This document shows, piece after piece, positions 31,103-52,090 of a stretch of DNA of 64,000 nt (the first letter of the stretch is position 1; each line of letters begins with the position of its first letter). Both the position numbers and the translations under genes were made by a program. The notes beneath the pieces are model-generated. The model made no database searches. It saw only the letters and a program-made list of their open reading frames with translations, and was not told the origin of the DNA. Source of the stretch: Orbicella franksi (lineage: Eukaryota); the NCBI GenBank assembly GCA_964199315.1, contig OZ116698.1, positions 10,540,001 through 10,604,000 on the forward strand, in the 5' to 3' direction.

Positions 31103-34100
31103 TTATGGAATCCCCGCAATTTCCCGCGGTCTCACATTTTCTTTAAACTGCCCTACGATGTTTCCCGGAGGAAAGTACCGCCCGACGACAACATTTCTCC
31201 CATCGGGGGCAACAGCCATTCCCATGCCAAACTCCTCTGTCCCTACCCAAACTAACTGGGTGAAATGGCTCGTATCAGAAGTGTAGCCAGGGCAGTCGAA
31301 GTCGTAATCTTGCACCTCATCGTACCACATGTCAACCGCCCCACGGGCGGAGAGCGAGCTATCCCATGTGTATGCCAAGTTCTCCCCGCGGTCTTTTTGT
31401 CCGCTGTGCGTCAGCGAATTGGTCTTAACCAGGCGCTCTGCGTAATTCTGCGCTTCTGCAGCCAGCAGTGGAGACCAGCGCAACGGTGGGGCGTTGTGAA
31501 ATGTACGGTAGTAATTATGTGAGATGACGCACTCAGTTTTAAATTTTTCTGATGATGTAAGAAGATTATGAGATGAGTTTACACAAATGAGAATGTGAGT
31601 GATAAAATAAAATAATAAAAAAATAACCTTTTTACCCTCGGCAGTGTTTAAAGCATAAAAGCTAGTAGGGCCGAGGAAACAACAGACACAAATAATTCAA
31701 ATTGAACATAAAATCGTTAAGCATCCCAACTGGCCGGATGTAAACCATTTGGCTATTTGCAAGCGTGGCCGAGGATTTGAACTTGGGGCTACTCTGAAAC
31801 AAATCCAGGTAGTGTCGAGAGAAGAACTCGAACCCGGGACCGCTTGATTGCGAGTCCGACGTGCTGACCACTCGGCCACACTGCCTCCACAGTGATGAAA
31901 TATGAAGCGCAAGTGTGCGAAAGTAGAAGAGACCCACTTAGGTAGTAGGGGTTTTTTCGGAGACTTCAGAAAGCAACTAGTGTTTTTACTTTGGTTTATA
32001 TAGAGGTGGTCTTGCTCTGCAGTTATTTGTTAGACGCGGACATCACAGCAAATTGCCTCCAAAACCTGAGCGTAACTGTTTTGCTCCGTCATTAGCCAGT
32101 CCCGGTGGATTTAGCTGTAGTATTGTAGCTGTGCCCAAATATCGAATTAGCATTTAAAACGCTTATTCTACTTGATTTAGATTTTAATAAAAATTACTTA
32201 TTGCATATCGCTCTTGATCTTTAACCAGTGGTCTGAAATTAATACGGCTTTCACCAACAAAGTCAGATTACACTGTTACTTTACGCACAGTGTACAGCAC
32301 AAATGTAACAAATTGTATTGAATGGCGGACATTCAATGCCTTCAAGCTTGAAGTTTTGCAAATCATCAAGTCTATTTGCTACCGGCAGCCAGCAAATCAA
32401 AGACCGAAATGCGCATTAGTGTGCAAACTCTAAGTTATTCATTGTCACTACCTCTTTCCGCTGGTGTTACTGGCGGAAGACCCGATCTTGAACGTCTCCT
32501 TGCACTTGATCTTCGTCTTTTCAGTCGACCTGACGAATCTCTGGGGGCTTTAATATTGTCTTTAAACTCTCCAACGATGTTTCCCGCCGGTTTATACAGT
32601 GCTGCAACATATTGCGTTCCATCGTCAGCGACACACTTCGCTACACCCAACTCGCGCGAGGAGGCCCAAACGACTTGCGTAAAATTACCGCACTTGGCAT
32701 TGTAAGCTGGGACTTCAAAATTGTAATCCGTGGTTTCTTTATACCACATTTCGACGACTTCAGAGCCATTTAAATCTTTCCCGTGTACGCTCAAAAGGTT
32801 TTGGCCTACTGCTTTTCCGTCGCAACGTTCGAGACAATTCACCGATGCCATATGTTCCGCCCACTCTTTTGCGTCAGCGGCCAGCTCGTCAGACCATGTC
32901 AGCGGTTTAACTCTGTGTTGTCGGCGGTACAAGTTGTGTTCTAGGAGACAGTTTTGCTCAAAGTCGTCTAATTCTGTAAAAAAAACAGAAACTGTGTTAC
33001 ATATCAAGTGCTTAACATTTAAAACTTCAGTTGAAAAGAAAAGAAATCTAACCTTCCAAATCAGCAGATGGGGTCGAGGACAGCGATCCTTCACTTGATA
33101 TATTTTGTTCACCGGAAGAGTCACTACTTAAATTCTGCTCCGTTTTTTCGTCTTTCGTTTTACTAGACTCAGAGACGTCTTTCTCTTTAGCAGGTTCTTT
33201 AGATAAACTCACGTCCTCTTTGTCTCCTCTTTCGCCAGAAGTGTCTTCTACCGTAGTCTCTGCAAAACTTTCCTGAGTTGTTATTTCTTCTTGTTCTCTT
33301 GAAAGGCTTCCAGAGTGTTCTTGGCATTCGCTGCTAATTTGGTAATCCGCCTTTTCTTCCTCCTTAGCTTGAACTTCAATAGACTCGGCTGCTTGTCGAA
33401 TCGAAGATGACGTCATGGTCTCGCCTAATTCATCTTCGTGTAAAGTTTCTTCACTACTAGAATGCACATCAGAATGGAATACATCCTCATCTCCTTCTTC
33501 TCCTTGGAAACCAGCATTTTCGTCATCACAGTCTTCATCAGACTCGACTTGGCTCAACTTCTCCTCTAAGATAACAAATGACTCCAGCCGCTCGTATTCT
33601 TCCAATTGACGCTGTTCCTCTTCATCCAGCTCGTCTTCCGGGGAATCATCGATTTCAAATTCTGGAGATTCCCGGATTTCCTCCAAGGCCATGTTTTCAA
33701 ATCCTTCTTCGAAGAAACCTTCTGGAACGGGCTCCTTTTCGGCTTTAAGGTCATCCTTGACGGATTCTACAACGTTGTTCTCAACATCATTTTCCTCTTC
33801 AGGAATGACATAGATCTCTCGGTGGTCCGGTATATCTTCTTCACCAGAAGATTCAAACTCATCACTATATCGCACCAGTATGAATTCTTCAAGGTTTTCT
33901 TCTAAGGGATCTCCCTGTCGCACGTAAGTTTCAGTGTACGAGGCTTCGCTTTCGACTTCCTCATAAGCTGGTTCTAAGCTCTCTGTCGATGACAGCTCTA
34001 CATAATAGCGTGTGGTAGCACTCTCATCATCCTCGTACAGATCAACTTGGCTCAAGTCGAGCGGTTGCCTTCGCGGTTTTGTTTGCGCTCGTTCGGGGTT

Positions 34101-37100
34101 TTCTTCATCGACCCATCTTTCGGAAATTCCTGTGTCGTCCGTTGTTTCATGCTCTTCGTCTTTACTCGACACGCCTTGTCCGTCTGTTTCTCTAGAAGCT
34201 GAGATATCTACTTCTTCTTCAAACACTGCATAAACCGCGCTTGGTTCAACTTTCTCGGCAGGCTCCCGAACTTCTTGAAACGCTGATACTTCCAATTCCT
34301 CTTCCAACTCGGGTGAATGTGTTCTAAGTTCAGTAGTTTCAACTGGCTCACGTTCAAGGTTTTCCTTGACCGGCTCATCACTACGTTCATAAGCTGAAAC
34401 TTCAACTTCCTCTTCAAACGTAGACGCTTGCATTGTGCTGTCGTTGGTTTTAGGAGACGTCTGTACTTGTTCCTGTACTTTTTGCATTTCCAGTTCTTCC
34501 TCATAAATAGGTTGCACTTCGCTGATCTCCACTTCTTCCTCAAAGAGTGGTTCCTGTTGATAACCTTCAGGGACATCGCTCTCCTCCTCTCGGTCAGGTT
34601 GGTTTACTTCTTCTAATGAGCCTTCCTTCTGTGCTTGCTCGTGAATTGGTCGTCCTTCACTGATCTCTACCTCTTCCTCGTAGATAGGTTCCTGTTGATC
34701 GCCTTCGTAGATATCGCTCTCCTCCTCACGGTCACTTTTGTCCATTCCGTCCACTGATTCTGCCTTGGAAGATCTCGACTGGCTACGATCTATACTTTCC
34801 ACACCCTCCCCACGGAATTCTTCCTCTGACAACGCTTCATCCATACGCATGATGTCAATTTCCTCTTCAAACTGTTCCCCCGCCGACTCTTCCTCAAGAG
34901 AGGCCTCGTCATCTTTCAAAATAACCAACACGTCATCCTGTGTTACAACCTGTTGAATTTCCTGAGCGTCCTTAACTTCAGAGTGGACAATGAAACTCTT
35001 CACAAATGTGGTCTCTCTTTCCACGGTTACACGTGGGTTCATCAAGGGAGTCTGCTGCTCTACTGCCTTGTATTCCATCACTTCGGTTTTAAGAAGGCGA
35101 ACTTCCGTTTCGTCCTCCGAGAGTTGTTTTTCGAACTTCGCAGATTCTTGATCTTTAGCTTCTTTCTCCAAAATACCCTCACTCAGTTCATCAGTTGTTT
35201 TAAATTGACGTACGTTGTCGCTCTTTTCCCAAGAAGTTTGGTTACTTGTTTGATGAATTGGAGTAAAAGATACTTCCTGAAATTTCTTGACTTCCTCGTG
35301 AAGTATACCTTCGCCTCCATTTTTCTCTGCTTTGTAGCAGATTTCCTCGCTTGCAAATCCAGTCGCAACGTAGGAGTTGGTAGAGGATACCTGACGCGTT
35401 GTTTTCGTTGCAAGAACCTCGACTTCGTAAGATGTTTCCATTTTCCTTGCTTTTTCTCCCATAAAGATTTGTTCCCCGTGTTTTGTCTCTTTACTTTCTA
35501 CAACCTGGTAGCCTGTAGACTTGATTTCAACTGATCTTTTTTCTGTCTCGCTTACAACCGTGAACGTCTGGATCTCACTTGCGAATCCTTTTTCTTCATT
35601 AGGCTCAGAAACTCGGCTTTCGTCCTTAACTTCAATTTCCCAAACCTTTTCTTGGATTTTTTCTTCTCCACGCACACTACGTTCTTGTTCAACGGTTCTT
35701 GTGTAATGTTCAACGCCAACGAGAGGCTCTTGTGCGGCGACTAATTGTGCGTTGTCAGTCTCGTCCCAAAGTTTGTCTTGTTGTTCTGCAATCTGCGGAC
35801 CACACCTGACTTTTTCCGAAACAACGGGTGCAGGCTCCTTTGAACTGGCCAAAGAAGTTTCACGTCCAAAGACCCCCTCCATTTCTTCATATTCTTCCAA
35901 AAAGTCTCTTTCACTTAAGTCGTCATCCTCTTCTGCACCAGCATGGTAGTCAGAGTCGGAGAACTCCGCAGCCGTCTGTAGTGGGGGCTCAGAGATGACG
36001 AAACTAGTCTCTGTTTCTAAAGGTTCCTCGACTTCGTGGTACGTCTGAGCTGTTTCAATCACAACTGATTTCTCGTTCAAGACATTTTCTTCGTAGATTC
36101 CCTGTGGTGACAGTTCTTCTGTTATGTACAGGGATCGTAACCCTTTGGATACTGACTTCTCCGAGATGTAGTCACTTTCCTCGTATGGTATAGCATGGTA
36201 AGTTTCGGTACCGTATTCTTCGTTGATTGTTTCATAATCTTGGAAATCTCTGAGTTCACTGGAGACGTGCAAAGGTGACGACGAACACTCAGATATCAAT
36301 TCTGACGCGGAACCCTCTTCGTTTTCTTCAAAAGGCTCAGCAAATTCCCTTCGTTCTTCTACATCTTCTATCTCTAGTGTAAACTCCGATTCGCAGGAGT
36401 CTGCTGTCACATGGGAGTGAGAAACTTCTTGGTCTTCCGTCGGATATGAGACGACTGTTTCTCCGTTGTCTTCGTATCTTTCCTTCTCTATATCATAGTC
36501 GTCTTCTGGCTCTTCTTCTACATAATAGGCATCATCTTCTTCATTTTCTGATAATTCACCAGAAAGGTTTACAAAAATAACGGGCACCTCTGTTTTTTCC
36601 CGTTCGTCGTACTGTTGCGCTATCTCGGTTCTTGTTTCGACCACTTCTGTGGATTCCTGCTGTGCGGCATCGATTTTAAGTTCCAATGCAGCGGCAGCAA
36701 TGCTCAATAAAGATTGTGGAGACTTCAGAACTACAGTGATAGCTTGCACCTCCGTTTCCTCAATCTCTTCAGCGCACGCTCCTTCGTCTGGTTTCTCCTC
36801 CTCAGACGATTCCTCTGGTGGTTCAATATTTGACAATTCTCCAGCTACATGAAATGAAGGCTGGGTTGTTTTGAGAATTTGGGTTGTGGTTATCAATTCT
36901 TGGCTCTCCTCATACGCCAAACTTTCTTCCACTTGCAAAACCTGTTCCAAAGCCTGATCGTGGGTGTCAATGTTTTTTATTTCTCCGGCAATGTGTGCGC
37001 TTTGTGATGGATCAATCAATATTTGAGTACCACAGATGCTCTCAAATTCTTCAAACTGTTCGCCAAAATCGGACTTGGGGGATTCATCGTCAGCTCTTAC

Positions 37101-40100
37101 TTCTAAGAGCTCTGAGCTGGTAAACTCGCCAGTGACATAATCGTTTTGATCTACAATCTCCAGGGAAACATAATCGTAACTGGCCTCATCATAAGTTTCT
37201 TCCAACTCTCGAGCGTGCTCTGCATCTAGTGTTGCCTCTTCATGTACTTCTTCAACTGTTAAAATGTCGAATGCTTCACCAGCAATGTCCATGGGAACGG
37301 AAGGTGTGGTGATCGTCACTTCATCCACAGACGAGTCTTCCTCCACAAAAAGAGACGCCCGTTTGTTTTCATCACTTGTCACCTCTGCAATCTCTTCAAA
37401 ACTTTCCATGCTTACACTCTCGCCAGCAAGGTGCGTTGGAGATGACGGTATATCACTTATCAATTCGTCTACTAGTGTTTCCTCTTCTGCAAACATTGAT
37501 GCTCGTTTACTTTCTTCAAAGAGTGCTTCCTCGACTTCTTCAAAGCACTCAATATTTTGGCTTTCTCCGTCAATTTGTTTTGGTGAGGAAGGAGTGTCAG
37601 TTTCAACTTCAATAACATCTGTACCTCCTTCTACATACAGTGATGCTCGCATGCTTTCTTCAGAAGGTTCTTCATCGACGTCTTCAAATGATTCAACATT
37701 ACTTTCTCCTGCAATGTGCTTTGGCGAAGAGGGAGCACCAGTTTCAACTTCAACATCTGTATCCTCTTGTAAAAATATCAATCCTCGTCCACTTTCTTCA
37801 ACGGGTTCTTCGCAAATTTCTTCAAAGGACTCGGCATAATTACAAGTTTCGCCTGCGACGTGTTTCAGCGAAGAGGGTGTATCAGTTGTCACTTCATCAA
37901 CAAGTGGTTCTACTTCAAAACAAACCGATGCTCTTTTGCTTTCTTCAATGTGTTCTTCCTTAATTTCGTCGAAGGGTTCAGCTTGTCGACTTTCGCCTGC
38001 AATGTGTTTGGGCGAGGAATGAGTGTCAGTTGTGACCTCATCTACAATTGATTCTACTTCTCCTCTTTTGCTTTCATTGATGGGCTCTTCATTAACTTCG
38101 TCAAAGGATTCCGCTTGTCGACTTTCGTCCGCAATATGTTTGGGTGAGGAGGGTGTACCAGTTGCCACCTCATCTACAAATGGTTTTACTTCAAAAAACA
38201 CTGATGCTCTTTTGCTTTCTTCGATGGTTTCTTCATTAACTTCGTCAAAGGATTCAGCTTGTCGACTTTCGCCCGCAATATGTTTAGGTGAGGAGGGCGT
38301 ATCAGTTACCACTTCATCCACAAGTGGTTCTACTTCAAAAAACACTGATGCTCTTTTGCTTTCTTCGATGGGTTTTTCATTAATTTCTTTAAAGGATTCA
38401 GCTTGACGACTTACGCCTGCAATATGTTTGGGCGAGGAAGGAGTGTCAGTTGTGACTTCATCTACAAGTGGTTGTACTTCAAAAAACAGCGATGCTCTTT
38501 TGCTTTCTTCGATGGGTTCTTCATTAATTTCGTCAAAGGATTCAGCTTGACGACTTACGCCTGCAATGTGTTTTGGCGAAGAAGGAGTGTAAGTTGTCAC
38601 TTCATCTACAAGAGGTTCTACTTCAAAAAACAGCGATGGCTTTTTGCTTTCTTCGATGGGTTCTTCGTCAATTTCGTCAAAGAATTCAGCTTGTAGACTT
38701 TCGCCCGCGATGTGTTTTGGCGAGGAGGGAGTATCAGTTCCAACTTCATCTACTAGTGTGTCTACTTCTAAAAACACCGATGCGCCATGGCTTTCTTCCG
38801 TCGCTTCCTCATGAATATCCTCAAAGGTTTCAACATTTCGGCTTTCTCCTGCAATGTGTTTTTGCGACGGAGTGTCTCGCACTACCTCATTTACAATGGA
38901 GTCCTCTTCCTCAAATAAGGAAGCACACTGTTCTTCTAGGGTTTCGTTTTCTTCTGAAGCAACCTCTGTTTGTTCGAGGGTTGCACCTTGTACAGCAGTA
39001 CATCTTGGAGAAGAGGGAGTTTCAGTCGCTCTGTCTTCTGCTACTGCGTTCTCGTCCATATATAATGATGCTGGCCTGCGTTGTTCAGCTTGTTTCACCT
39101 CAATGATTTCCTCTGTGCGTTCACTTTGTCTACTTTCATGAGAAATATATTCAGAGGAAGAAGGAATAAAATACACTGCCTCATCAACTGTTCCATTTTC
39201 CTCAACGTAAAATGAAGCTTGCGGAGTTTCTTCGTTTGGACTTGTTTCTGTCACAGCCTCCTCGAGGCGTCGAGTTTCAGCAGCTTCATCTGCAAATGTT
39301 GTGTCGTCTTCTTCCAGGCGACGAAACATCTCTTCAAAGTTAATCTCAGATTGAACATCTCGACGGACGTCGGCCTCGATATGCTCTGCAATCTCTGGTA
39401 ACTCAATCACTCTTGATGATTTAGGTGTATGATTATAATGTAACGGCTCCACTGACTCGTCAAAAGAGTGCGTTATGTCAGATGAGACGGTAACTAAACC
39501 GAATTCTAAACCAGTTTCCTCAAGAACCTTCGCGCGCTCTTGATCGTAATCACGAAGAGCGGCTTCACAAGACTGTTCTTCCATGGAAGTATCAGTCCTG
39601 TCCTGAGTGATTTCGTCCTGTGACTCTTCTTTTTCAATTGAACTCTCCAACCGGACCTCTAACTCTTTCAGGTCCATTGCGTTTTCAGGCGGACGATCTC
39701 GTCTACCTGATTCAATAATGGTCTCGCGAACAAGTTCAACTAAATCTACAGGTTTCGAGGTTTTGCACTCGTAGTGTAGAGATATGTCTGGCTGAGATTC
39801 CTGTTCTTCTTCCAACGCGCTCGTTAATACAAGTCCAATGTCAACACCTACTTTTTCTATATCCGCTGTACGTTCGCTTTCATGATCTCTCAATACAACC
39901 TGAACGGTGTCCAGAGACTCGGTTGTCTCAAGACGTTCCATACTAGTTTCGTGTATTTTTTTCGCTTTTTCATTTTCTGTCTCGCCATTTTCGAGTTTTT
40001 TAAACAAGGCTTCAAAATCTATTTCCGATTCTACGCTGTCTTTAAGAAAGGCCTCGCAGATCTCTTCAACTGGTGTTCTTTCCTGTTGTTGCTCACGATC

Positions 40101-43100
40101 ATTTCTGTTGTTCATAAGATTTTCCACAAACTTTCCTTCCGTTGTTTCGTGAAAATCGGAAATTTCGTCACTGGCCCCTTCACTTTCGAAAGTCGACGAA
40201 ATTCCCATTCTAGAAATAAGGTCTTCCATTCGAATATTTACGTGATCTTGTTTTACCGCCAAGTAACAAAACTCAGGATCTGACGTTCTTTGAAAAGATG
40301 CTTGTGGCACCTCAATTAGCGCCTCGCTAGTTTCAAAACGTTCTTCACTGTACTCATCTGGCACATCTTCCATGAAATTCGGTGGTTCATCTTCGCACAA
40401 TTTGAAAGTTTCAGTTTTTTGAAATTTCGTAGCGGTGCTCAATTTCGTTGACGCGTAAACAGTTTTTGTTGAAGATCGTGGTTGCTCTTCCTCCTCCGTA
40501 ATATCAGCATACTGGTGTGACGCATCCTCGTCAGAAAAATCAAAGATCTCCATAGCAGATGGCTCTTCTTCCATAAATTCGTGAGTTACGCAGACGCTGT
40601 CTTCGAACTCATAATCTTGAAGGCCCTCATGCCTCGTTTCACAATTTGTGTAATCCAGCACGTCCTCTGCGTCCGATACACTTACCAGACTTTCATTTTC
40701 GTCTTCGCCCTCGTCGTCGAATATTTCTACGTGTGACTCTGCTTCGTCTCCTTCTCTGTGAGCAGGAAATACGTCATCAAATTCCAACTGGCATTCGTGC
40801 TCTTCTTCCATTATTTCTTCTTCTTCCTTCCTTTCTTCTTCTTTGTGAAGCGATTGCCTTTTCTTTAGAGAAGCCAGTTCTTCCAGTTCTTCTTGAATGA
40901 GACTTCGCCTAAGTGACGATTCTGAATTGGAGGGCGATTGCCTTCCATGTTGATACGTTTCAAAGAAAGCTATTTTGGAGAGGACGTTTCCTTTATGCAT
41001 TTCTGGTTCGGTACCATCCGAGTCTAATGAGAGAGAACGTCGAATTTCACAGAAATGTTGGTAAAGATCGTCCTCGGGATCAGAAAACAAATCAGCCTCT
41101 TCCAATTCGGCCTTCTCCGTATGTACCAATGGTTCCTCAGTCACGCAAGTAAGATCTGAAGAGAAAAGGCACGATGTTACAAGCTAACAGGTAAAGATTG
41201 TCACATTCAAGAGAAAAAAGTATGCTTGCGGTAAGTTGCGTTTTGAAGAGGTCAGAAGCCATTACAAAATAATAAAGGCAATGAGATCTCTAATGATGTA
41301 CATAAGCTGCAAAACTGGAATTTACTTTTCATGCAATACAGAATGGCCTCTCCTTTAATTTAGATTTGGAAGCTATTATAATGCCTCTCGGAATCCGCTT
41401 CAGGAATGCTTGTTTTCTTACCGTCTTCTTCTGTCGCGTTATCCATTTCATACGCTGTCCTAGCATCTTCTTCTTCTTCCTGCTCTCTTTCATCTTCTGG
41501 TTCGTGATCATTCTCTTCCTGGGCGGTCTCCTCTGCAACTCCTTTCCTCTGAAGAGTGGGACTGTTAGGATCTATCCACACCAGGCGGGTGAAGTGATCG
41601 CTTACAGACAGTGTGTTTGCAGAATCTTGCTCGTCGGCCCTGTGGAGGATATTCTCGTTCTCATCAAACTGGTCCAAGTCACTGAGGGGGGAAAGTGTCA
41701 ATGACACTAAATCAGCATATCGGCAAACTAAGGGATGAAATCTGATATCATCCATCAAGCGCATGGAAATATAGGCTCCTAAATTCTTAAACCCTCTTCT
41801 CCTCTTCCTGTTTTAAAGACCATTGTTCCCTTCAAACAGATATAGGAACTGGTATATTCGTGTTAGATCAAGGCTCCGTTAGAGAACAGTCATTAGTATA
41901 AAAACAACGGAAACAGATATAACAACACAGCTGTTCTCCTTTTCATGTATCTGTATTTCTCATCTTGGGAAAATGTCAATATTTTTTTCTGGGGGAGGTC
42001 ATGGGTTATGAATAGGCAAGATGAGGAGAATTTAAGATTAATCACTACTGGGAATTAAACTAAATGTAAATACTTCTGCTACAAGATTGAAACCAATCAT
42101 TTCTGAATTTTTTTTTTTTTAATAACCGCGCTAAGTTAGTGATTAGCTTGTTAGAGAATTAAAGAAATTTGAAAGTTGTTTAACTTCGTGTAGTTATATT
42201 CGTCACATCTTAAATATTATGTTAAGAGTATTATAGGGAAACAAACGACTTCATTAATTTGATTCACTTGTCGTTTGTATAAATAATATTATTGGATTAT
42301 TGTATTAAGTTATTTTCTATATTTTTGTAAGAAAAAGACGTTAAGTAAATGTTAGGAAGAATTATGCTTTTTTAAAACTTATTGGTTATAACGTTTTTGA
42401 AGACTATTATATAAGTTTCAGCTAGCTGTTCAAGTTAGATACTTATTTGTTATGTATTTAGTTTCCCAAGCGTTACTTCGCGTTAATATTTTTTAACGTT
42501 CATTTTGTTTTAACAGGGAAAACAAATTTAATTCAGTTTGAATTTGTTTAGATAAAATCGCCACCTACCACAAGTAGTAAGATATTACTTAGCAAAGAAT
42601 GATGAAACAGCGAACGAAAGAAAAAGAACAAAATAAGTATGAAAATATGAGTCCAGTCAGTGGAGGCAAATGAGTCGTCAGTGACTAAAACGTAGTTGAG
42701 AAGGTCAACGGAGGGGGTTAGTGAATGTTCAAAAGGCAAAAGAAACGTTAATCGGTCATCAGTGAAACTGTCCGAAGTCAAGGGACGTCGAAATTGTTTT
42801 CAGAGTCAGAAAGTAACGAGAGTATAAACGAGCAAAAAGGACGAATGGAATATTAGACAAGATCATTCACCCAAAGCTTAAATCAAAATTACAAAGAAGA
42901 GTTTAAAGGTTAGGTTAGGTAGCCTTTCCCATCACCTCGAACGCCGCCAAGTCTTTTGGTCGTGTGCAGCGAAAGGCGTTATCAGATTGAAGATGTCAGA
43001 GTGATTTAATAATGTCACTGTTTTAAAGGGTTTAGTCAAGTTCGATGATTAGAATTTCCGAGTAAAAGAGTTAAGGAGTGTTTACTTTTGGCTTATAACG

Positions 43101-46100
43101 CGAGTGTTTAAAACATCTTATCATGATTGGCGTGAGCAACTTCAGACTACGTTTACAAGAGAGCAAAAGTTAGCGAATTCTTCAGGTATCTGGAAAATCC
43201 TGGCCTCGGATTCGCCGGGTTTTTCTTTATTTTCTTGGTTTTGTTTCAGTGATTGTTTGTTTTTTCAGATGGGTGCTTTTATTTGTCATATTGAAATTCG
43301 GGAATCAAAAGAAAATTTTACGCTGAAATGTTTGTGGTAACCAGCTTTGTAATAAATGCGGTCGCGTATCAAATATAGTTAACAATAACAGCACGTGATT
43401 ACCCTTCAATCGCTAACTTTATGAAATTCACCAAACTTGTCTCCCGAAACCTTTATGGCATTGTAAAAAAAAAAAAAAATAGGACAATGGTGATCATAAC
43501 ATAAGACGAAATAAGGGACTACTCAAATCCAGGAATTACTTGTCTCAGATCTATCAATTACTTTATCAGTCCGCTCCAATGTAGTAGGTTCCGTGTTAAA
43601 CGGTATACGTACAACTACAAAAAGAATAATAAAGAGTTATCTTAATTCGTCGGCATCGTACTGTGTCTTGTAGTATAACCGCATAAAGGTGGGGCAACAA
43701 AAAGGCTGTTTTTTTTTTTTTTTTTCTCAATTCTGATTTCATCTTCTGACAGGGAACTTTTCTCGCGAATATGAAACTATTATAAAATCAAATTTTCATT
43801 TCATCGGCCTATTCAGACTGGCCTTTCTTGAGCAGTATAAAACAATGATGACAAGTAACACTACCATTTGCTGTCATTCTGGTATGTTTGGTCTTATAAC
43901 TTGGAAGTTTATCGGTACAGACTCTTTTAACCATGTATGCATGAATTGGGGGAACCTTACCATGGCAATGGCGAAGAAAAGAAATTGTGCCAACAATAAT
44001 TTTAATGCTTACCGCGAAGTACACAAACTGGGCTATAAGAGATAACAGGAAGGAGACGGGAATATTACAGTCCCAAGAAACGTATGTTACCCACCCTCAC
44101 CACATTCGTTTTGTCTGCCGAGGCATGAGCCAGTGCTCATTCAAATTCATTTATATCATACTCCTGAGAGGACAGGCAATCACACATGGAAGCTGGTTTG
44201 CGCAAGCTAAAATAATGACCATAGTTCAACTCTCTACCTCTGGGGATCGAGCCCTATAAATTAGAGAACTTGAATTTTCATTCTTTTTCAGGGGAAGTTC
44301 TTCCCTGCACGCAACCAAACGAATTCTCTTGGCTATACCTACGCGTTATGTAACTACCGCACAAAAAGAGAAAGGTTAGCAGCAAAATTTCACAAACGGA
44401 TCCGTACGGTTGACGCCTTGGCGCGCGTTAACTTGCGAGACGGAACGGACAAGAGAGGGAACAATTTAATGATTTTACTAAGGACATCCGAATACCGCGC
44501 GACTTTTGCTCTCGTGTCAACGTACTCCGTGAGGGATCTGAGCAAGGCGGACAAACGAGAGTTCATACCTCCAACTTAAACTGGCGGCCATACTGAGGGG
44601 AGGGGAAAGGTGACAGCTGTTTCGACACTGGTCCAAGTCTTCTAATAAACGGTTTAACAGAAACTTTGCGCGGGTAAGTCCACTCCCCTGAGGTGCTTGA
44701 CAACTAAAGTGGCGACACAAATCAACATGTTAACCAGCTGTTTGATCAACGGCCAATATTCGTCTCTGCTAAAAGAAACCTTCGTCATTGTTATTCCGCG
44801 TTCACGTGATGATAAAATACTGTTTCCGAGGTTAAAGCCTGTTAAACGGTTTTGGGGAAGCAAAGATTGTCTACGTCCCGTGCAAAGCGATAAGTTTGCA
44901 AAGAAACTACTCTGTCGCATCCGCAGGAAAGTGAAATACTTATCCATCGGCCTTCAACCCTACTTAAAAGTTGTGGTGGAAATATTGTCGTTTTGTCCTC
45001 CATTTATACGCAGTAAGCAACGAATGTTCAGTGTTAAACAAAATAAAACACTGTGACTTCAAACTCAAAAGCGTGTGTGAAATCAAACCACTGGCATGTT
45101 GTACGCGGCTGCATGAGTGTTGTGATTGGGTGGTTTAAAGGCACATGCATACTAGCCTAGACGCTATGTATGTGCATTAATATTTGTTACCTCCTCTTTG
45201 TAGTGTCGCCCGCTAACTCACCAAACGTCTGCGTATCTGGAGAAACAAGAGAAGTGATAATTCATATTTCGTGCACGAATAACGTACTGGAAAATGTAGT
45301 CGATTTTGGTTGGAGAAAAATTGGTGGAAAGTCGTACAAAGGATGCAGGATCATTTCCAAAGTCGGCCTAAATAATAAACCTAGAGGTAATTCAAGATTG
45401 CCGAAATACAAGATCCTTCGAAAAGTTTCGAAGTTTGCCGAAGGCTACCGAACAAGTCGATCGATGACGCTTGATGAATCCAAGCCCTTAAGTAATTACT
45501 GTATGCGTATAAATACCTAAACGAATAGAAAAATCCCCTCCCCTGAAGAGACTTTCGTGTATTTTGCGGGACCATTAGTACCTTTCGCATTACCAAATCA
45601 AGAGCCAATAAGGCTAAAGGTAGCAGAGCAAACGCATCTTGAAGCTAACAATTGATGGGGTCTCGCGTCGTGGCCGAACCATGAGAGATCGCGAAAAACA
45701 TGTCATTTCTAAATCAAAAATATAATCCACACCTTCGTTTTCCCAGCTCAGAAAGCTGTTGGTGGACTTGCTGTCGGTTCGCACTCGGTATCTGTATTCA
45801 ACATGGAATATCATTGGTTCACAGCTGCCTCTCTCGTGTCCTCTTCGCTTGACATTCTGTACAAACAGCCCGTCTATGTTACCTACAGGCTCGTACCGTG
45901 CCACCACTACAGTCACGCCTTCCGCCCCGGTCGCTTTACCCACGCCAAACTTACGACTGCTCAGCCACACCAGCTGGCTAAAGTCAAGTGTCTCGTTACT
46001 GAATCCGGGACTGTCGAAATCGTAGTTCAAGATTTCTTTGTACCAGAGCTCAGAGACCTGGGAAGAGTAAGGGAAAAAAATGGTTTTCGTTATCTTAATA

Positions 46101-49100
46101 TATACGCACGACCTGATCACGGGATCAGGTTTAACAAGTGGTCAGATCGTGCATCTCCAAACCGAGGCAACGGCGTCGCTTAGGTCAGAATGATGTTCAA
46201 GCTGTTATTTTCTAATGCAGTTTAATAGTTTTTTCCTCCATAAGGAGCTACAATGTTTTGAGACGTGTCTAATGATAAGCTCTCAATTACAAGCCGTTAA
46301 ACACATTTCATTTATGCTGTTTTGTTTTTGCGCTGAATTTCCATCGACAGCAAGTGCTGTGCAGCTAATACGATTGCACGTTCGCCAATAGTCAGCCAGT
46401 GCAACAGTGACGAACAATTCCCTAAGACCCGTGTTCTACAGTATTCTATTACCTTAATCCCACTGATGTGCGCCTTGTCTAGCACCGCCACACTGATCCC
46501 TATCCGCGAGTTATCCAGTCCCTCCATGGCGCCCGTCACAAGCAGCCGCTCGGCCCAGTACTGCGCCTCATCTGTTAGGGCACTGCTGAGAACTAGCGGT
46601 GGAGAGCCATGGCGGGCTCTGAAGTAGTTGTGTGTCACAAGGCATTCCAGGCGAAAACTTTCTAAATCTAACGGAAAATACAGAATCAGATCCTAGACCC
46701 ACACAGGCCGTCGAAATCTAACGTTTCATTGAGATTTGGATCGACATAATTGTAAATTTTCGGATTCGTATTGATTTTATCAGTACGAATGCCACGTTCC
46801 ACGCCATCTTCTAGTCCTTTGGAAAGATCATGCTGCTTAGCAACCTCTCTGGTAAAAGAGAAAAGGGTTCTCGTCAGAGAAGGGACTCTCGTCCAAAATG
46901 AGACCAGTTTTTCTTTTACTGTATACCACTGTATTCAGTGAGACTTATTCTATTGTTGTACCGACAAATTCTCAGAAGTAACCTCAAACGAAATGTGTGG
47001 TCGTCAGAAATGAGAATTTGTATTTTGAGCTTATGATTGAAGGGGTTGAAACTGAAAGGGATTGGAAGTTACCACTCACCAGGAGCGGGCGGTACAAAGC
47101 CCTTTAGTTCTTTACTCTTTCTCTCTCTAACAGCCGACCCCATACGAAGAACGTTATCAGCAAATGACCCCTCCATGTTCCCAGGAGGCTCATAAAATGC
47201 TACCACCACGCAGAGATCTCCATCAATGGCCCTACCGACTCCGAGGGACTCTGAAGCGACCCAAACGACCTGCCAAAAAAAAAAAACAAAATTTGTTAGA
47301 ATTCAATGCGGCAAATATACGTGCTGTAAGAAGGTATCTTTACTCAAATGTAGGAGTGGTGATCTTACTTTATTTTATGACAAAAAGAAGGGTAGAGTAA
47401 AAAATAAATAAATGAATAAACAGTTGCGGAAACACTCCAGAAACGCTTTCAGATCACTGCTGAAGAACACAGTGAGCCTTCATGCCAATTTACGGAAGTT
47501 CCACTTGCAGCACATTATATTCCCTAAGGAAAGATTTAGAGAATGTGACATTACCTGCGTGAAATTTGACGTATCTTCGCTATACCCTGCGCTGTCAAAG
47601 TCATAATCTTCTATTTCATCATACCACATGTCCGTCGTCTCCCGGCCAGAAAGCTCGCCGCCCATCATTCCCGCCAAATTCTCACCCACTGTGTCGTCAT
47701 CGTTGTGCCGGAGCTCGCCACTTCGCGCCAAGTTCTCGGCCCACTGCTGTGCTTCCCATGCGAGCTCCGCTGACCAGTGCAAAGGAGCCGCTCCATGTCT
47801 GAGCCTGTACTCGTTGTGCACCGAGAGACATTCCTCGTGAAACTCTTTAAGTCCTGGGTCAACGAGTGAAATTAATTTGTTGCGAAAGCTGGTTAGAAAA
47901 TAGTTTGGTAGGATGTTTATTTACAAGATGTCACCCGATAAACATTGAACTAAATACATGTTTTCTCTCGGTAAACCTTGAAACAAAGTGTACTAGTCAG
48001 TACCGATTAAGGTGGCTCCCTATAGTTTTACGATCGCACGAGCGCTGAGGAAGTAATCTGCGCGCGCTCAAAGGAAACGTCAGTGTTTTTCGATATTTTA
48101 TTACGTCAACATGAGCACAAAAAAGCAAAACTGACAGTGAGTTTTCTCGCGTTTCCTTCGGTGAAATTCCGTTAAATTTGGCAGATTGGTAGTAAATATT
48201 TTATTTTAGTCGGAGCTCGTTTTTCAGGGAAATCTATAAGACCAGATTTTTTGCAGCGGTAAAAGACATAAATTTGAAAATATCGAAAAAACTGCCTCTA
48301 CAAACCCTACTTTATTCGTGTTTAAAATTCGTATCCCGCTGGAAGCGATGTGATGTAAACATTTTGGAAGATTTCACCGTAGGAAATTCATGAAAATCAC
48401 AAATAAAGCCATAAAACAGTAAAAAATACATTTGTTTGAGCATTTAAAATTCAAGACTAAATCCCAAAATTTTAACAGAGATGATAGCAAAATACTATTT
48501 AATCATTGTTTATTATATGTATTAAGTTTGAGAGGACTAGGTGTGAAAAGCGAATGCGAAACAGCATTCAAAACATAACACTTGCGCGCGCAACGCCATA
48601 AATGATTATCCTATGGAGACACCTTAAACTCAATAAGAAAAATAATGAGATGTACATATACTATCATTCGAGAATCTATTTCGTGGTTCAAGTAAAGTCA
48701 TTATCACAAGCAACTCGAACTACCACAAACATTTCTTAGCGAGCGGTTGAAAATTGAGCACACAATGAGAGACGTCTGTTGTCATTAAAAGTTAGTTGCC
48801 ATGTCATTTTTTAACGGCAAAAAATAGAAACATGCTTTCGCGTACGTGCTGTAAGCAATGTGTCAGCGGATCTTTGTTTATTTCCTCGTTAGGGTAAGTT
48901 ATATTTAACTTGACTGACATAAACATTTGATGAATTGATCAACACTGTAGTATTTAATGGAAGGGTAATGCTTAAAAAGAATTCAGTATAGTCATTTTTT
49001 TATACCCGTTTTCTCTTATAACTTATCTGTGAAGCCGCAAATTCACTCTCTTCCCTATATCACCGCATACACAGTATCAAAAACAATCAACATTTCCCAA

Positions 49101-52090
49101 AACTTGCTAATATAATTTTATTCGCGCAAATACCACACAAAAATTTTTAATAATGAATGGTTTTAACAGAAACAATGACGCCAGTGTAGTGGCTCGTTTC
49201 CAAATCAATTGTGTGCGTGGGGTTTTTATTTTTAATTTTTTAGACTCAAAGTGGGAGAATTTCCGTTTCACAGTGTTTACGTTCGGGATAAGCTGCGGCA
49301 GTTAAACTTCAAAACGACTGCACCGATTGAATAGAAGTTTCGATAAAAATAAAGCTCAAGATGTAACAGCACTAAGCTGCTCTGTCGTATAATTGCATAT
49401 TCAGTTCCACTTACAGCAGGTACAGGTGGTATAAAGAATTGAGCCCGAATCCAGCCTTTGTTTTTAACCGCTGTAGAGATGAAATATCTATGGCGCCATG
49501 TTTCTGATTAGGAATAATTTTTCGCGAAAATAAGGGAAAAGACTACAGAAACGTGTCGTTAGTTTTGCAACATGTTCCTTTCCTCAAAAAAAAAAAAAAA
49601 TGGACCCTCAAACACTTAAAATCTGTATTATAAAACGAACATTTTTAAAATTCACAGACAATTTTCAGTGAGATGAAAGCGTCACTGCCACTCTGTGGAA
49701 ATTAACCAGAGTTCTAATCGTTGCGAAACCAACCAAATTTCCACAAAACTCAAATAAATTAGCTTGAGTTGTTTTGACGGTCAACAATCGTTTCAACTGG
49801 TGGATGGAAAATAATTCGTTCATAACATATGCAAAACAAATAAATTTCAATTCGAGGAAGTTCGAAAAATTGTCTGAAGCATTCGCAAAGGCTCACAAGG
49901 AATCTCTTAGTTGGTTTCTTATTATTTGATCCATCGACTCATTCCGAAGAAGACGAAAACCAGCTTTTTCTTTTCTAGATGCAACAGGTGATCAATAACG
50001 ACAATAGGTTTACCTCAGTTCCCTTAATCAACCTCCCGTACAACAAAAACGAAAACAAAGAACAGAAAAGAAAAAGCTAAAGAGGAGATTCAAAATGACA
50101 AAAAAAACCAACAACAACAACGAAGATATAATCGGAAAGTCCTAACGTTTCCACAATATAGTTGAAGAATTACAAGTTACTGACCTAAAGAGGAATTCTA
50201 GAATTAAATGCAAATTTCACCACTTTAAGAACCTATTAAAAAATTGGTCAAAACAACTCGATCGATAATAAAGATTCGTTTTTCCCTCATTCATTGTTAA
50301 CTAAACCGGTGCAAATCTTTATCCAATAAAAGGAGAATCCATCGAGTAAAGTTTTTCGCTAAACCGCTTTGAATAAAGCATCAGTACTTTAAAGACCATG
50401 AAAGTGACATATTTTTGTTTTAATGCAAATCGATTCAAAATCTTAGCGGACAAACCTAGTAAACCAAAACAAAGCGAGACAACTTCCGCTGAATCCGGCG
50501 CAATGCCCAAGCAAAGTCAAATATTTGCAACACTCTACAAACTGACTGAAGAGTTATTACATCGGCGGAGTCGCGTGCTCAATCGTTGCTTTAGAATGTT
50601 CGTCGATTGCCTATTTCTCGAGAACGTCGACCGACCACGTTGTTGTTGTTAAAATTAACGAATTGATCAACGGTGTGTGCAGTTTTCATTCATTTTAATA
50701 ACATAAAGATCCTCCCAGAGGCTGAGTTTTGATTGAATATACGTAGAAATAGTTTGCTGCGACAATCTGTATCCGAGACGCGCTTTTAAATTGACGTCTG
50801 AGTACCCGAGCAAACAACGAAAATCGCATGATTTTTTTCCCCTCTTGTCGACAATGAATTTCAGTGTCGTACATGTTAATAGCATGCGAACGTCGATAGA
50901 AAATATATTCCCTAAATATTGCGCTCATGTCTAATGGCTTGGAGACCGTAATGACAAGGAAAATCGAGAAAATTCAATATTATAAAGATATTAAACGTGT
51001 TTCAATTTTTCACTTCTACATCAATCGAATGAATTAACGTTCTCGAATTGTTTTATTTATTTCAGGCAGGCTAACTTGTGAACAAAATGCAAATGAAAAA
51101 TCTAAAGCACAGCGGTCGCCATACGAGAGCGAAAAAATAATGCCATTTTCTTACCAAGATAGAGTCTGCTCCAGCGTGTATCATACGCCAGTGGCTGTTC
51201 GTTATCTTGCGTGCTTCTTGCTTTCTTCACGTTTCTCGCCACATCTTTTTTGTTCATTGGGGGAAAATACCGTGCCACCACGATCTGTTTTCCGTATTTG
51301 GTGACAGCCGCTCCCGCGCCAACCTCGCGCGTACCCTCCCATACCACCTGACAGAAAGAGCGCGTTCGCGAGCTAACACGCGGCTTGTTATGACCAAAAT
51401 ACTTTCCCTCTTCGTACCATATTCGAGTCACCTTCTGTCCGTTTAGTTCTGAGCCCCACAAGCAGACGAAGTTCTCGCCGATGTCCTTCTCGGAGCTGTA
51501 TCTGGGTGAGCCGGTACTTGCGAGATGCTGTGCCCAACTCTGCGCGCTCTCCGCGAGTCTAGATGACCAGCACAGAGGCGGTGTTCCATGGGCTGCGCGA
51601 TAGAAGTTGTGGGCAGCTACGCATTCATTGCGAAAGCGCTGCAAGTCTGAGAATAAAACGAACATGGGGCGTTAGCTCATGCGAAGTTATTGACCAGCGA
51701 TCTACGGAACGCCTGAAAACTGACAGAATGACAAACTACAGAAAAATCGTGAACTCCCATGGCGGTTACTTTCCTCATTCACCGCTCAGTCAAATTTGCT
51801 CGACTAAAGCTGACCCTGACTAAAAATTGAAAGCCTCCTCGACGATCCTTCGAACAGAGCTTTCAAACGACAAAAATCTCACTCGTAAACTGAGTGTTTG
51901 ACTCCGAATCCGTGTCAAATGCCAACATAGTTCCCTATGAAGTGTTATTAAGCTTCTGTAGTCTTCAATTCGATTTTCCAGACTCGCGCGTGAGCCAGCC
52001 AAACCAGAACTGACACCGATCACAGAGCGAAGGGAGAACAATTACAATAAGAATACTTCCATCATAGCCCAACTCACCGCTTTTTTCCAT
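31103..52090 (-). CDS. Giant multi-CAP (SCP/GAPR-1-like) protein: CAP1-CAP2-CAP3-decayed CAP-acidic region-CAP4-CAP5, about 3692 aa
   Basis: Minus-strand exons: 52078-52090 (MEKS, least certain), 51155-51646, 47555-47853, 47080-47269, 46453-46667, 45733-46057, 45222-45236, 44569-44641, 41422-41807, 33053-41155, 32452-32973, 31103-31548. All are GT-AG with compatible phases; total 11079 nt, a multiple of 3. Each CAP shows HN.(Y/F)R..H...PL, G.N/S, WY.E and F.Q(V/L)VW..ARY.P-type motifs. No signal peptide. AATAAA lies about 60 nt past the stop (31038-31043). Confidence 0.85.
31645..31888 (-). mobile_element. tRNA-derived SINE (family 2)
   Basis: Minus strand: GGAGGCAGTG, A box TGGCCGAGTGG, B box GGTTCGAGTTC. 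The body (CTGGATTTGTTT..GTTCAAATCCTCGGCCACGCTTG..) is unrelated to the SINE at 1397. Confidence 0.8.
33053..41155 (-). CDS. Single 8103-nt exon encoding a Glu-rich, probably disordered 2701-codon region of the multi-CAP protein
   Basis: Uninterrupted ORF (track ORF 33048-41144). Acceptor CTTTTCTCTTCAG and donor G|GTTAGA, phase 1 at both ends. Confidence 0.9.
37200..39140 (-). repeat. Coding tandem array, 144-bp (48-aa) unit, about 13 copies
   Basis: The HIAG-equivalent anchor recurs at 38995, 38851, 38707, 38563, 38419, 38275, 38131, 37999, 37855, 37711, 37570, 37426 and 37282 (spacing 144, once 132, once 141). Consensus TPSSPKHIAGESRQAESFDEINEEPIEESKRASLFFEVEPLVDEVTTD. Confidence 0.95.
48011..48623. 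mobile_element. Non-autonomous DNA transposon, Kolobok-like
   Basis: TTAA|GGTGGCTCCCTATAG ... CTATGGAGACACC|TTAA: imperfect TIRs with RR..YY ends and a TTAA target-site duplication. A piggyBac would end CC..GG. Confidence 0.65.

What the first reader, a model, noticed from the sequence alone, without database searches (positions are those of the whole stretch)
37200..39140. Each 48-aa repeat packs an acidic F-x-x-I/V (LIR-like) core between a proline-directed and a PKA-type phosphosite
Eleven consecutive units keep F-x-x-I/V (FEDI, FDEI, FDEI, FKEI, FDEV, FDEV, FDEI, FEEI, FEDV, FEEV, FEEI) in acidic context. Most also keep P-S-S-P (P-x-S-P MAPK-type consensus), and six keep K-R-A-S-hydrophobic (PKA consensus). 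One unit reads EFFDEID, close to the FFAT motif EFFDAxE. Mammalian GAPR-1 binds Beclin 1 and restrains autophagy (established). A GAPR-1-like protein with a multivalent, phospho-tunable ATG8-binding array would be a new kind of autophagy scaffold. Caveat: such short cores arise easily in acidic sequence, and tandem copying alone propagates them.
Basis: inference. Interest (0 to 1): 0.75.

Follow-up and report, generated by a model that had tools for sequence, protein, structure and literature searches.

The report
Conserved docking-motif repeat in coral giant protein
A stony-coral gene for a giant cytosolic protein carries a disordered 48-residue repeat that corals have kept for hundreds of millions of years. 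Its acidic F-x-x-I/V core is real and selected, but nothing yet shows that it binds the autophagy protein ATG8 rather than another partner such as the phosphatase PP2A-B56.

Summary
The minus strand of 37305-38870 encodes eleven 44-48-residue units. Each has F-x-x-I/V, most have P-S-S-P, six have K-R-A-S-hydrophobic, and one reads EFFDEID.

The array lies in an 8.1-kb acidic exon of Orbicella faveolata "titin-like" XP_020612383. That protein has 3+2 GAPR-1-like CAP domains and no signal peptide. The exon is present in spliced polyA RNA, and the units are predicted to be disordered.

Every stony-coral ortholog found has the array (about 5-24 units). A sea-anemone ortholog has none. A profile of the unit found nothing else among 1.8 billion proteins.

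F17 and I/V20 are more conserved than their neighbours. However, the S-S-P-K-H-I/V-A-G-E and R-A-S-L-F/Y blocks are better conserved. The aromatic residue survives in only 26% of the most diverged units, is never W, and is replaced mainly by T, V, L or I.

All eleven cores also carry E at +5. F-x-x-[IV]-x-E-E therefore fits the PP2A-B56 docking motif as well as a LIR. The FFAT-like unit is confined to Orbicella and close relatives. The PKA-type arginine is lost in Acropora.

Verdict: a lineage-specific multivalent docking and phosphosite array whose partner is unknown. The ATG8 reading is possible (about 15%) but not singled out.

The parts
37305..38870 (-). Eleven well-formed 44-48-residue repeat units (ORF residues 759-1280). 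Each has the blocks P-S-S-P-K-H-I-A-G-E, F-x-x-[IV]-x-E-E, K-R-A-S-L-F and V-D-E-V-x-T-D-T.
   Evidence: The F-x-x-[IV]-x-E cores lie at 38808-38825, 38664-38681, 38520-38537, 38376-38393, 38232-38249, 38088-38105, 37956-37973, 37809-37826, 37671-37688, 37527-37544 and 37383-37400. Median dN/dS among units is 0.30. Tandem Repeats Finder gives a 144-nt period.
38871..39164 (-). Two degenerate upstream units (ORF residues 661-758). They keep P-S-S and A-S-L-[YF] but have T or no aromatic residue at the F position.
   Evidence: Similar degenerate N-terminal units occur in Desmophyllum, Stylophora and P0015.
37161..37304 (-). Degenerate terminal unit (ORF residues 1281-1328, begins PSVPMDIAGE). 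It has no F core.
36216..37010 (-). Three dispersed relics of the first block downstream of the array: SAHIAGE (about 36972-37010), SFHVAGE (about 36828-36866) and SPLHVSSE (about 36216-36284).
   Evidence: Comparable dispersed S-P-x-H-[IVL]-A motifs are all that the sea-anemone ortholog has.
33053..41155 (-). Giant acidic exon (about 2700 codons, 21% E, net charge about -537) that holds the array.
   Evidence: ORF. No Pfam family. Splice acceptor and donor read. RNA contigs run to 41156 and continue into the upstream exon, and no joints lie inside the exon between 35500 and 41156.
45734..51665 (-). Exons of the three N-terminal CAP (GAPR-1-like) domains: 51153-51665; 47552-47854 with 47081-47272; 46450-46668 with 45734-46057.
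   Evidence: Exon mapping of P0043. Pfam CAP in 3 stretches. Best solved match is GAPR-1 1smb/4aiw.
31106..32974 (-). Exons of the two C-terminal CAP domains: 32453-32974 and 31106-31549.

Best explanation
The stretch encodes a 48-residue tandem repeat that is intrinsically disordered and, as far as the databases show, restricted to stony corals. It sits inside the roughly 2700-residue polyanionic spacer of a giant cytosolic protein. That protein has three N-terminal and two C-terminal GAPR-1-like CAP domains.

Each unit is a cassette of short conserved islands separated by variable acidic spacers:
1. S-S-P-K-H-[IVL]-A-G-E, a proline-directed site.
2. An acidic F-[DE]-E-[IV]-x-E-E core.
3. [KR]-R-A-S-[LMV]-[FY], a basophilic-kinase (Kemptide-like) site.
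4. V-x-E-V.

The most likely role is a multivalent array of docking sites and phosphosites that concentrates one or more cytosolic partners along the spacer. Copy number (about 5-24) is reset by unequal crossing-over in each coral lineage.

Shown here: the repeat, its transcription, its predicted disorder, purifying selection on the units, and which positions are constrained.

Inferred: that the islands are partner-binding motifs and phosphosites.

Not resolved: the partner of the F core. Its consensus fits a LIR and the PP2A-B56 LxxIxE-type motif equally well. It is also the island that decays first in diverged units.
For: - Identity and architecture: 99% identical to O. faveolata XP_020612383. 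CAP domains 3+2. Nearest solved structure is GAPR-1. No signal peptide.
- Transcription: 14 RNA runs hold the stretch. Contigs of four of them, from three studies, cover 35500-41156 with no joints and are spliced to the upstream exon.
- Disorder: AlphaFold2 on three units with a 42-row alignment gives pLDDT 35 throughout.
- Selection: median dN/dS among Orbicella units is 0.30. Several synonymous codons are used at invariant or nearly invariant positions P1, S3 and V42.
- Cross-species retention: arrays occur in all scleractinian orthologs, including Desmophyllum, Stylophora, Acropora and Montipora.
- Conserved columns across 365 unique units: 1-10, 13, 17, 20, 29-34, 41 and 44.
- Non-homogenised arrays still keep the islands. 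Montipora and Stylophora units are only 0.32-0.38 identical to each other.
- Restriction: the unit profile finds only these proteins among 1.84 billion. The Actinia ortholog lacks the array.
- Core ambiguity: WxxL fits 225 of 365 units and the loose B56 pattern fits 222 of 365. The B56 rules come from PMC10970375.
Against: - No partner was identified, and no binding or phosphorylation data exist.
- Every island drifts in some lineage: R30 and H6 in Acropora, F17 in the species of contig L015 (P0192) and in P0018/P0019. The constraint could therefore be a looser hydrophobic and charge pattern rather than pocket-specific motifs.
- Concerted evolution inflates apparent conservation inside each species.
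Confidence: 0.6

Rival explanations
1. The F-x-x-I/V cores are LC3-interacting regions, so the protein is a multivalent, phospho-tunable ATG8/GABARAP-binding scaffold linked to GAPR-1-type control of Beclin 1.
For: - Core plus upstream E and S/T fits [FWY]xx[ILV] in 225 of 365 unique units. The stricter xLIR pattern (written from memory) fits 120 of 365.
- The units are disordered and cytosolic.
- The genome has ATG8-family loci on four contigs.
- GAPR-1 binds Beclin 1 and restrains autophagy (PMC9273008).
- Phosphorylation around LIRs tunes affinity (PMC8786283).
Against: - The aromatic residue is the least persistent key position (26% in the most diverged quartile).
- It is never W, is Y in only 5 of 365 units, and is replaced by T, V, L or I.
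- The residue at -1 is P in 61 of 365 units.
- E at +5 is as conserved as the core, which a LIR does not require.
- No binding evidence exists.
Confidence: 0.15
2. The core is a PP2A-B56 docking motif of the LxxIxE class. The array recruits B56 holoenzymes next to the proline-directed and basophilic phosphosites of the same units.
For: - F-x-x-[IV]-x-E is present in 11 of 11 Orbicella units.
- Column 22 is E in 309 of 365 units and D in only 10.
- E23 follows in 61% of units.
- Published rule: [LMFI]xx[ILV]xE, E6 invariant, acidic residues at P2 and P7-9 raise affinity (PMC10970375).
- The L, I and M replacements seen at position 1 are allowed by this motif.
Against: - F at P1 is a low-affinity determinant. 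With V at P4 (4 of 11 Orbicella units; 69 of 365 F-V-E units) binding should be weak under the same rule.
- T and V at P1 are common in diverged units.
- E is abundant everywhere in this exon (21%).
- No binding evidence exists.
Confidence: 0.15
3. There is no specific partner. The units are sticker-and-spacer or polyanion modules, acting as an entropic tether, a cation buffer or a condensate former. The motifs are hydrophobic stickers carried along by tandem copying.
For: - Hydrophobic class is kept at columns 7, 20, 33, 41 and 44 in 74-99% of units at every level of divergence. Column 17 is hydrophobic in 304 of 365 units (my sum of the counts).
- Every exact motif drifts in some lineage.
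- Copy number varies about 5-24.
- The anemone ortholog manages without the array.
Against: Specific non-hydrophobic residues (S3, P4, H6, N13, R30, A31, S32) are among the best conserved columns. A pure pattern model does not predict this.
Confidence: 0.2
4. The EFFDEID unit is a FFAT motif that binds VAP.
For: Unit 806 matches positions 1-4 and 7 of EFFDAxE within an acidic tract.
Against: - Only 1 of 11 units has it.
- E-F-F-D occurs in 6 of 365 unique units, all from Orbicella or orthologs at least 65% identical to it.
- Position 5 is E, not A.
Confidence: 0.02

Closest known systems
Canonical LIR/AIM motifs of autophagy receptors, including the multi-LIR receptor RTN3L
   Same: An acidic [FWY]xx[ILV] core in a disordered cytosolic region with S/T nearby. 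Several copies in one chain, as in RTN3L with six LIRs (PMC5517149).
   Different: - No ATG8 binding has been shown.
- The aromatic position is not the best kept and never swaps to W.
- The copies here are units of one tandem repeat rather than independent motifs.
PP2A-B56 LxxIxE docking motif
   Same: [LMFI]xx[ILV]xE followed by acidic residues, lying next to CDK-type and other phosphosites (PMC10970375; PMC8786283).
   Different: F rather than L at P1, and V at P4 in a third of the units. An array of 11 or more copies is not described for B56 clients, to my knowledge.
KNL1 MELT-repeat arrays (from my own knowledge, not checked here)
   Same: Tandem units in a disordered scaffold. Each unit bundles phospho-dependent docking motifs, and arrays expand and homogenise independently in each lineage.
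   Different: The sequence, protein and process (kinetochore) are unrelated. The likeness is in how it works only.
GAPR-1/GLIPR2
   Same: CAP domains without a signal peptide. GAPR-1 is the best solved match.
   Different: - Five CAP domains instead of one.
- No glycine at position 2 for myristoylation.
- A 2700-residue acidic spacer.
- The repeat itself has no counterpart in GAPR-1.
Titin PEVK / E-rich region (source of the NCBI name 'titin-like')
   Same: A long, disordered, glutamate-rich repeat region.
   Different: No Pfam or profile match to titin. The name reflects composition only.

Membership tests
Canonical LIR (ATG8-interacting motif) | Aromatic W/F/Y at the first core position | tested here: inconclusive
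   F in 11 of 11 Orbicella units. F or Y in 242 of 365 unique units, never W. Retention is 26% in the most diverged quartile.
Canonical LIR (ATG8-interacting motif) | L/I/V at the fourth core position | tested here: met
   I, V or L in 324 of 365 unique units.
Canonical LIR (ATG8-interacting motif) | Acidic or phosphorylatable residues just upstream, in an accessible disordered cytosolic segment | tested here: met
   E15 in 68% of units. Column 16 is S in 146, T in 28 and P in 61 of 365 units. pLDDT 35. No signal peptide.
Canonical LIR (ATG8-interacting motif) | Binding to the LIR docking site of an ATG8-family protein | not testable with these tools
   The one complex job gave no verdict. Peptide binding assays are needed.
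PP2A-B56 LxxIxE motif | [LMFI] at P1, [ILV] at P4 and invariant E at P6 | tested here: met
   Met in 11 of 11 Orbicella units. My broader pattern, [LMFYWIC] at P1 with [IVL] at P4 and E at P6, fits 222 of 365 unique units. Rule from PMC10970375.
PP2A-B56 LxxIxE motif | [quoted passage not shown] | tested here: inconclusive
   I at P4 in 7 of 11 Orbicella units. The stricter ELM-type pattern (written from memory) fits 139 of 365 unique units.
PP2A-B56 LxxIxE motif | Binding to the B56 groove | not testable with these tools
FFAT motif (VAP binding) | E-F-F-D-A-x-E core with a small residue at position 5, conserved in orthologs | tested here: not met
   One unit of eleven. Position 5 is E. EFFD occurs in 6 of 365 unique units, all from Orbicella or close orthologs.
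PKA-type basophilic site [RK][RK]x[ST]-hydrophobic | Two basic residues at -3/-2, S/T, hydrophobic at +1 | tested here: inconclusive
   Six K-R-A-S-hydrophobic units in Orbicella. Fits 175 of 365 unique units. R30 is present in only 1 of 11 and 1 of 18 Acropora units.
Proline-directed site (P-x-S-P / S-P) | S/T followed by P, with P at -2 for the MAPK type | tested here: met
   S-P in 268 of 365 units and P-x-S-P in 184 of 365. S3 is kept in at least 90% of units at every level of divergence. Phosphorylation itself was not tested.
GAPR-1-like (intracellular CAP) proteins | CAP domain, no signal peptide, N-terminal myristoylation | tested here: inconclusive
   CAP domains 3+2. GAPR-1 is the best solved match. 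No signal peptide, and residue 2 is E, not G, so there is no myristoylation site.

The most novel reading that the evidence does not exclude
The central units are genuine LIRs whose affinity is set by the flanking proline-directed and basophilic phosphosites. This giant five-CAP protein would then be a coral-specific multivalent ATG8 scaffold that couples GAPR-1-type Beclin 1 control to autophagosome membranes, possibly in handling of symbionts. A variant of similar novelty: the own CAP domains bind the repeat cores, as GAPR-1 binds a short Beclin 1 strand, giving a self-associating tether.
Probability: 0.15. Interest if true: 0.75.

Novelty: new variant of a known kind. Interest (0 to 1): 0.42.

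Why it matters
The host protein is an undescribed giant intracellular multi-CAP protein found in stony corals and in the one sea-anemone ortholog recovered. I found no paper on it. The repeat is a stony-coral innovation: it is transcribed, kept under purifying selection, and has clear candidate docking sites and phosphosites.

If a partner is found (ATG8, PP2A-B56 or the protein's own CAP domains), that would give the first functional handle on this protein. It would also provide a natural example of a tandemly amplified short-motif cassette. The analysis here defines which residues to mutate to tell the candidate partners apart.

Tried and rejected
- Complex prediction: one repeat unit with a full-length GABARAP stand-in. 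The stand-in was P0119, 81-88% identical to the coral's own three GABARAP exons. Score 0.03, no verdict, controls not run. The tool is untested on peptides, so this is no evidence either way.
- Pfam on the giant exon: nothing.
- ESM Atlas look-alikes of five units: no usable hit.
- Hydra LOC100206500 looked like a distant ortholog by its CAP domains. It has a hydrophobic, signal-peptide-like N-terminus, many CAP domains and S/P-rich linkers, so it is not comparable.
- P0197, a weak hit of the unit profile, is an ankyrin-repeat protein and a false positive.
- Papers that mention GAPR-1 in corals concern other, small or secreted CAP genes. None describes this protein.
- Gamma-ear/GAE 'acidic FxxPhi', clathrin-box, RVxF and 14-3-3 readings were considered from memory and not pursued, because the consensus did not fit by eye.
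- Plus-strand ORFs across the array (for example 37264-37839) are antisense by-products of the repeat. They were not tested further.
Full report
WHAT IS THERE

The minus strand carries one open frame from 41144 to 33048 (2698 codons). It is 21% Glu, has a net charge of about -537 and matches no Pfam family. Reading the splice sites gives an exon of 33053-41155.

Inside it, ORF residues 759-1280 (window 37305-38870) form eleven consecutive units of 44-48 residues. Tandem Repeats Finder sees the youngest seven as a 144-nt period at 82% identity.

- The eleven F-x-x-I/V cores appear in the stated order.
- P-S-S-P is in eight of these eleven units (variants PSQK, HSSP, PSSL).
- K-R-A-S-hydrophobic is in six units.
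- EFFDEID is in the second unit.

Two degenerate units precede the array (38871-39164) and one follows it (37161-37304). None has the F core. Three isolated S-x-H-[IV]-A-G-E relics lie further downstream.

WHOSE GENE

The exon is 99% identical to Orbicella faveolata XP_020612383 'titin-like isoform X4', 3639 aa. Exon mapping places three CAP domains upstream (45.7-51.7 kb) and two downstream (31.1-33.0 kb). Pfam finds CAP in 3+2 stretches, and the nearest solved structure is GAPR-1 (1smb/4aiw).

The N-terminus conserved among corals starts MEKSDLQRF and runs straight into CAP1. There is no signal peptide and no Gly2 for myristoylation. The protein is therefore expected to be cytosolic, which any short-linear-motif reading requires.

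IS IT EXPRESSED

Fourteen RNA runs hold 63-94% of the array's 31-mers. Contigs of four of these runs, from three studies, cover 35500-41156 with no joints. They break only at the near-identical central units. All four continue at 41156 into the same sequence, which is the upstream exon. The array is therefore part of a spliced mRNA and is not spliced out.

FOLD

AlphaFold2 on three units with a 42-row alignment gives pLDDT 35 everywhere. The units are predicted to be disordered.

DISTRIBUTION

All 41 scleractinian relatives that contain the array region have it, with roughly 5-24 units. They include Desmophyllum, Stylophora, Acropora and Montipora.

A profile of 78 diverse units, searched against 1.84 billion representative proteins, found only these proteins and their fragments, plus one false ankyrin hit.

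A search with the C-terminal CAP pair recovered a true ortholog in the sea anemone Actinia tenebrosa. It has 3+2 CAP domains, an acidic spacer and colinear conserved islands. It has no 48-residue array, only two dispersed S-P-x-H-[IVL]-A motifs and one EEFEEVDE. The array is thus an innovation of stony corals, built from elements that may be older.

One deep-branching relative, on contig L015, has CAP domains about equally distant from robust and complex corals. It has only about six units, and the F position there is L, V, T or F.

WHICH POSITIONS ARE CONSTRAINED

The analysis uses 365 unique units with position-based weights.
- The best columns are P1-S-S-P-K-H-[IVL]-A-G-E (columns 1-10), N13, [KR]29-R-A-S-[LMV]-[FY]34, V41 and V44.
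- F17 (2.07 bits) and [IV]20 (2.05 bits) stand out against their neighbours (0.7-1.3 bits).
- They rank only about 16th-19th of 48 columns.

Binning units by their identity to the consensus on the other 27 columns gives the following:
- An aromatic at column 17 is kept in 93%, 87%, 55% and 26% of units, from the least to the most diverged quartile.
- In the most diverged quartile, S3, hydrophobic 7, E10, S/T32 and hydrophobic 33 are still kept in 87-91% of units, and I/V/L20, E22 and F/Y34 in 74-81%.

Column 17 is never W, is Y in 5 units, and is otherwise T (39), V (20), L (17) or I (16).

In arrays whose units are old (mean pairwise identity 0.3-0.45), the aromatic survives in 7 of 10 units (Montipora), 5 of 7 (Stylophora), 4 of 12 and 4 of 11 (P0018, P0019).

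Within Orbicella, median dN/dS among units is 0.30. F18, E16, E23, E28, V42 and E44 of the alignment are invariant.

Shuffling each unit's inter-block residues gives a WxxL core in about 10% of units, against 86-90% observed in the two consensus-like quartiles. Outside the array the exon has WxxL cores at the composition-expected rate.

In short, the F core is real, selected in the central units and older than any single array. It is not the deepest or strictest element of the unit.

WHAT THE CORE COULD BIND

The consensus is E-[SPT]-F-[DE]-E-[IV]-x-E-E.

- As a LIR. It fits [FWY]xx[ILV] with upstream acid or Ser. WxxL fits 225 of 365 units and xLIR fits 120 of 365. LIR definition and phospho-tuning are in PMC8786283.
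- As a PP2A-B56 site. It fits [LMFI]xx[ILV]xE with acidic P2 and P7-9. The published rule makes E6 invariant and asks for L at P1 or I at P4 (PMC10970375). E at +5 is present in 11 of 11 Orbicella units and 309 of 365 overall, with D in only 10. The loose B56 pattern fits 222 of 365 units and the stricter one 139 of 365.

The two readings cover the same units and decay together, so sequence alone cannot separate them. The substitutions seen at the first position (L, I, M, C as well as T and V; almost no Y, no W) lean slightly away from a LIR.

Other motif claims:
- The -1 residue alternates S/P/T, so a conserved phospho-switch there is not supported.
- The FFAT-like unit is a variant confined to Orbicella and close relatives, with E at position 5.
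- The K-R-A-S-L site is Kemptide-like in robust corals and Montipora. Acropora units read K-E/Q-A-[ST]-M-S-F.

A third possibility is that the islands act as hydrophobic stickers in a polyanionic tether without a dedicated pocket. The strong conservation of S3, P4, H6, N13, R30, A31 and S32 argues against a pure pattern model.

BACKGROUND CLAIMS

GAPR-1/GLIPR2 binds Beclin 1 and negatively regulates autophagy (PMC9273008). Multi-LIR receptors exist already, for example RTN3L with six LIRs (PMC5517149). A multivalent ATG8 binder would therefore be a new instance rather than a new principle.

No paper on this coral protein was found.

VERDICT

Best reading (0.6): a stony-coral-specific, disordered, multivalent cassette of docking sites and phosphosites, with partner unknown.

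Rival readings, not mutually exclusive with each other or with that best reading:
- LIR about 0.15.
- PP2A-B56 about 0.15.
- Partner-less sticker or spacer about 0.2.
- FFAT about 0.02.

I confirmed that architecture here.

Noticed in passing
window 3740-10680 (+) and 23360-28884 (+): Two tandem polycystin-1-like genes. Large plus-strand ORFs carry PLAT/LH2, Polycystin_dom and PKD_channel domains in the same order in both copies.
   Followed up: partly
window about 39.3-40.1 kb (-), ORF residues about 375-640: The giant exon holds a second, older internal duplication of about 200 residues. Each copy contains an S-E-I-[DN]-F-E-[AE]-[LM]-F-[KR]-[KR]-L-E island. The same island is conserved in the Actinia ortholog (ESEIDFEEMFERLEKGE), so it is older than the 48-residue array.
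   Followed up: no
window about 33.9-34.6 kb (-), C-terminal part of the giant exon: Islands such as EEFILVRYSDEFESSGEEDIPDHREIYVIPEE and LEEYERLESFVILEEKLSQVESDE are nearly identical between Orbicella and the sea anemone Actinia, despite the otherwise fast-evolving spacer. They are candidate functional motifs or a folded element.
   Followed up: no
window 44571-44705 and 41423-41683 (-): NCBI isoforms X1-X5 differ by including or skipping a 45-residue exon (44571-44705) and by a 14-residue stretch at the start of the next exon.
   Followed up: no
window 37750: RNA contigs from two runs (one labelled 'organism B', one a coral metagenome; about 99% identical to the window) carry an in-frame CAA insertion inside the array, plus about 45 substitutions over 5.6 kb. 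This points to a sister Orbicella species or a divergent allele with the frame preserved.
   Followed up: no
L015 10001-17085 (ENA ERZ25071792 contig): In a deep-branching coral relative the giant exon is called as two genes (820 + 1528 aa), separated by about 35 nt. This could be a stop, a frameshift or an assembly error. That species has only about six units with a poorly kept F position.
   Followed up: partly
G000 C3:28965896-28973271, C10:26573069-26574526, C4:25109340-25115724, C13:6649994-6652970: ATG8-family matches lie on four contigs of the coral genome. The C3 locus is a three-exon GABARAP 81-88% identical to invertebrate GABARAP P0119.
   Followed up: partly
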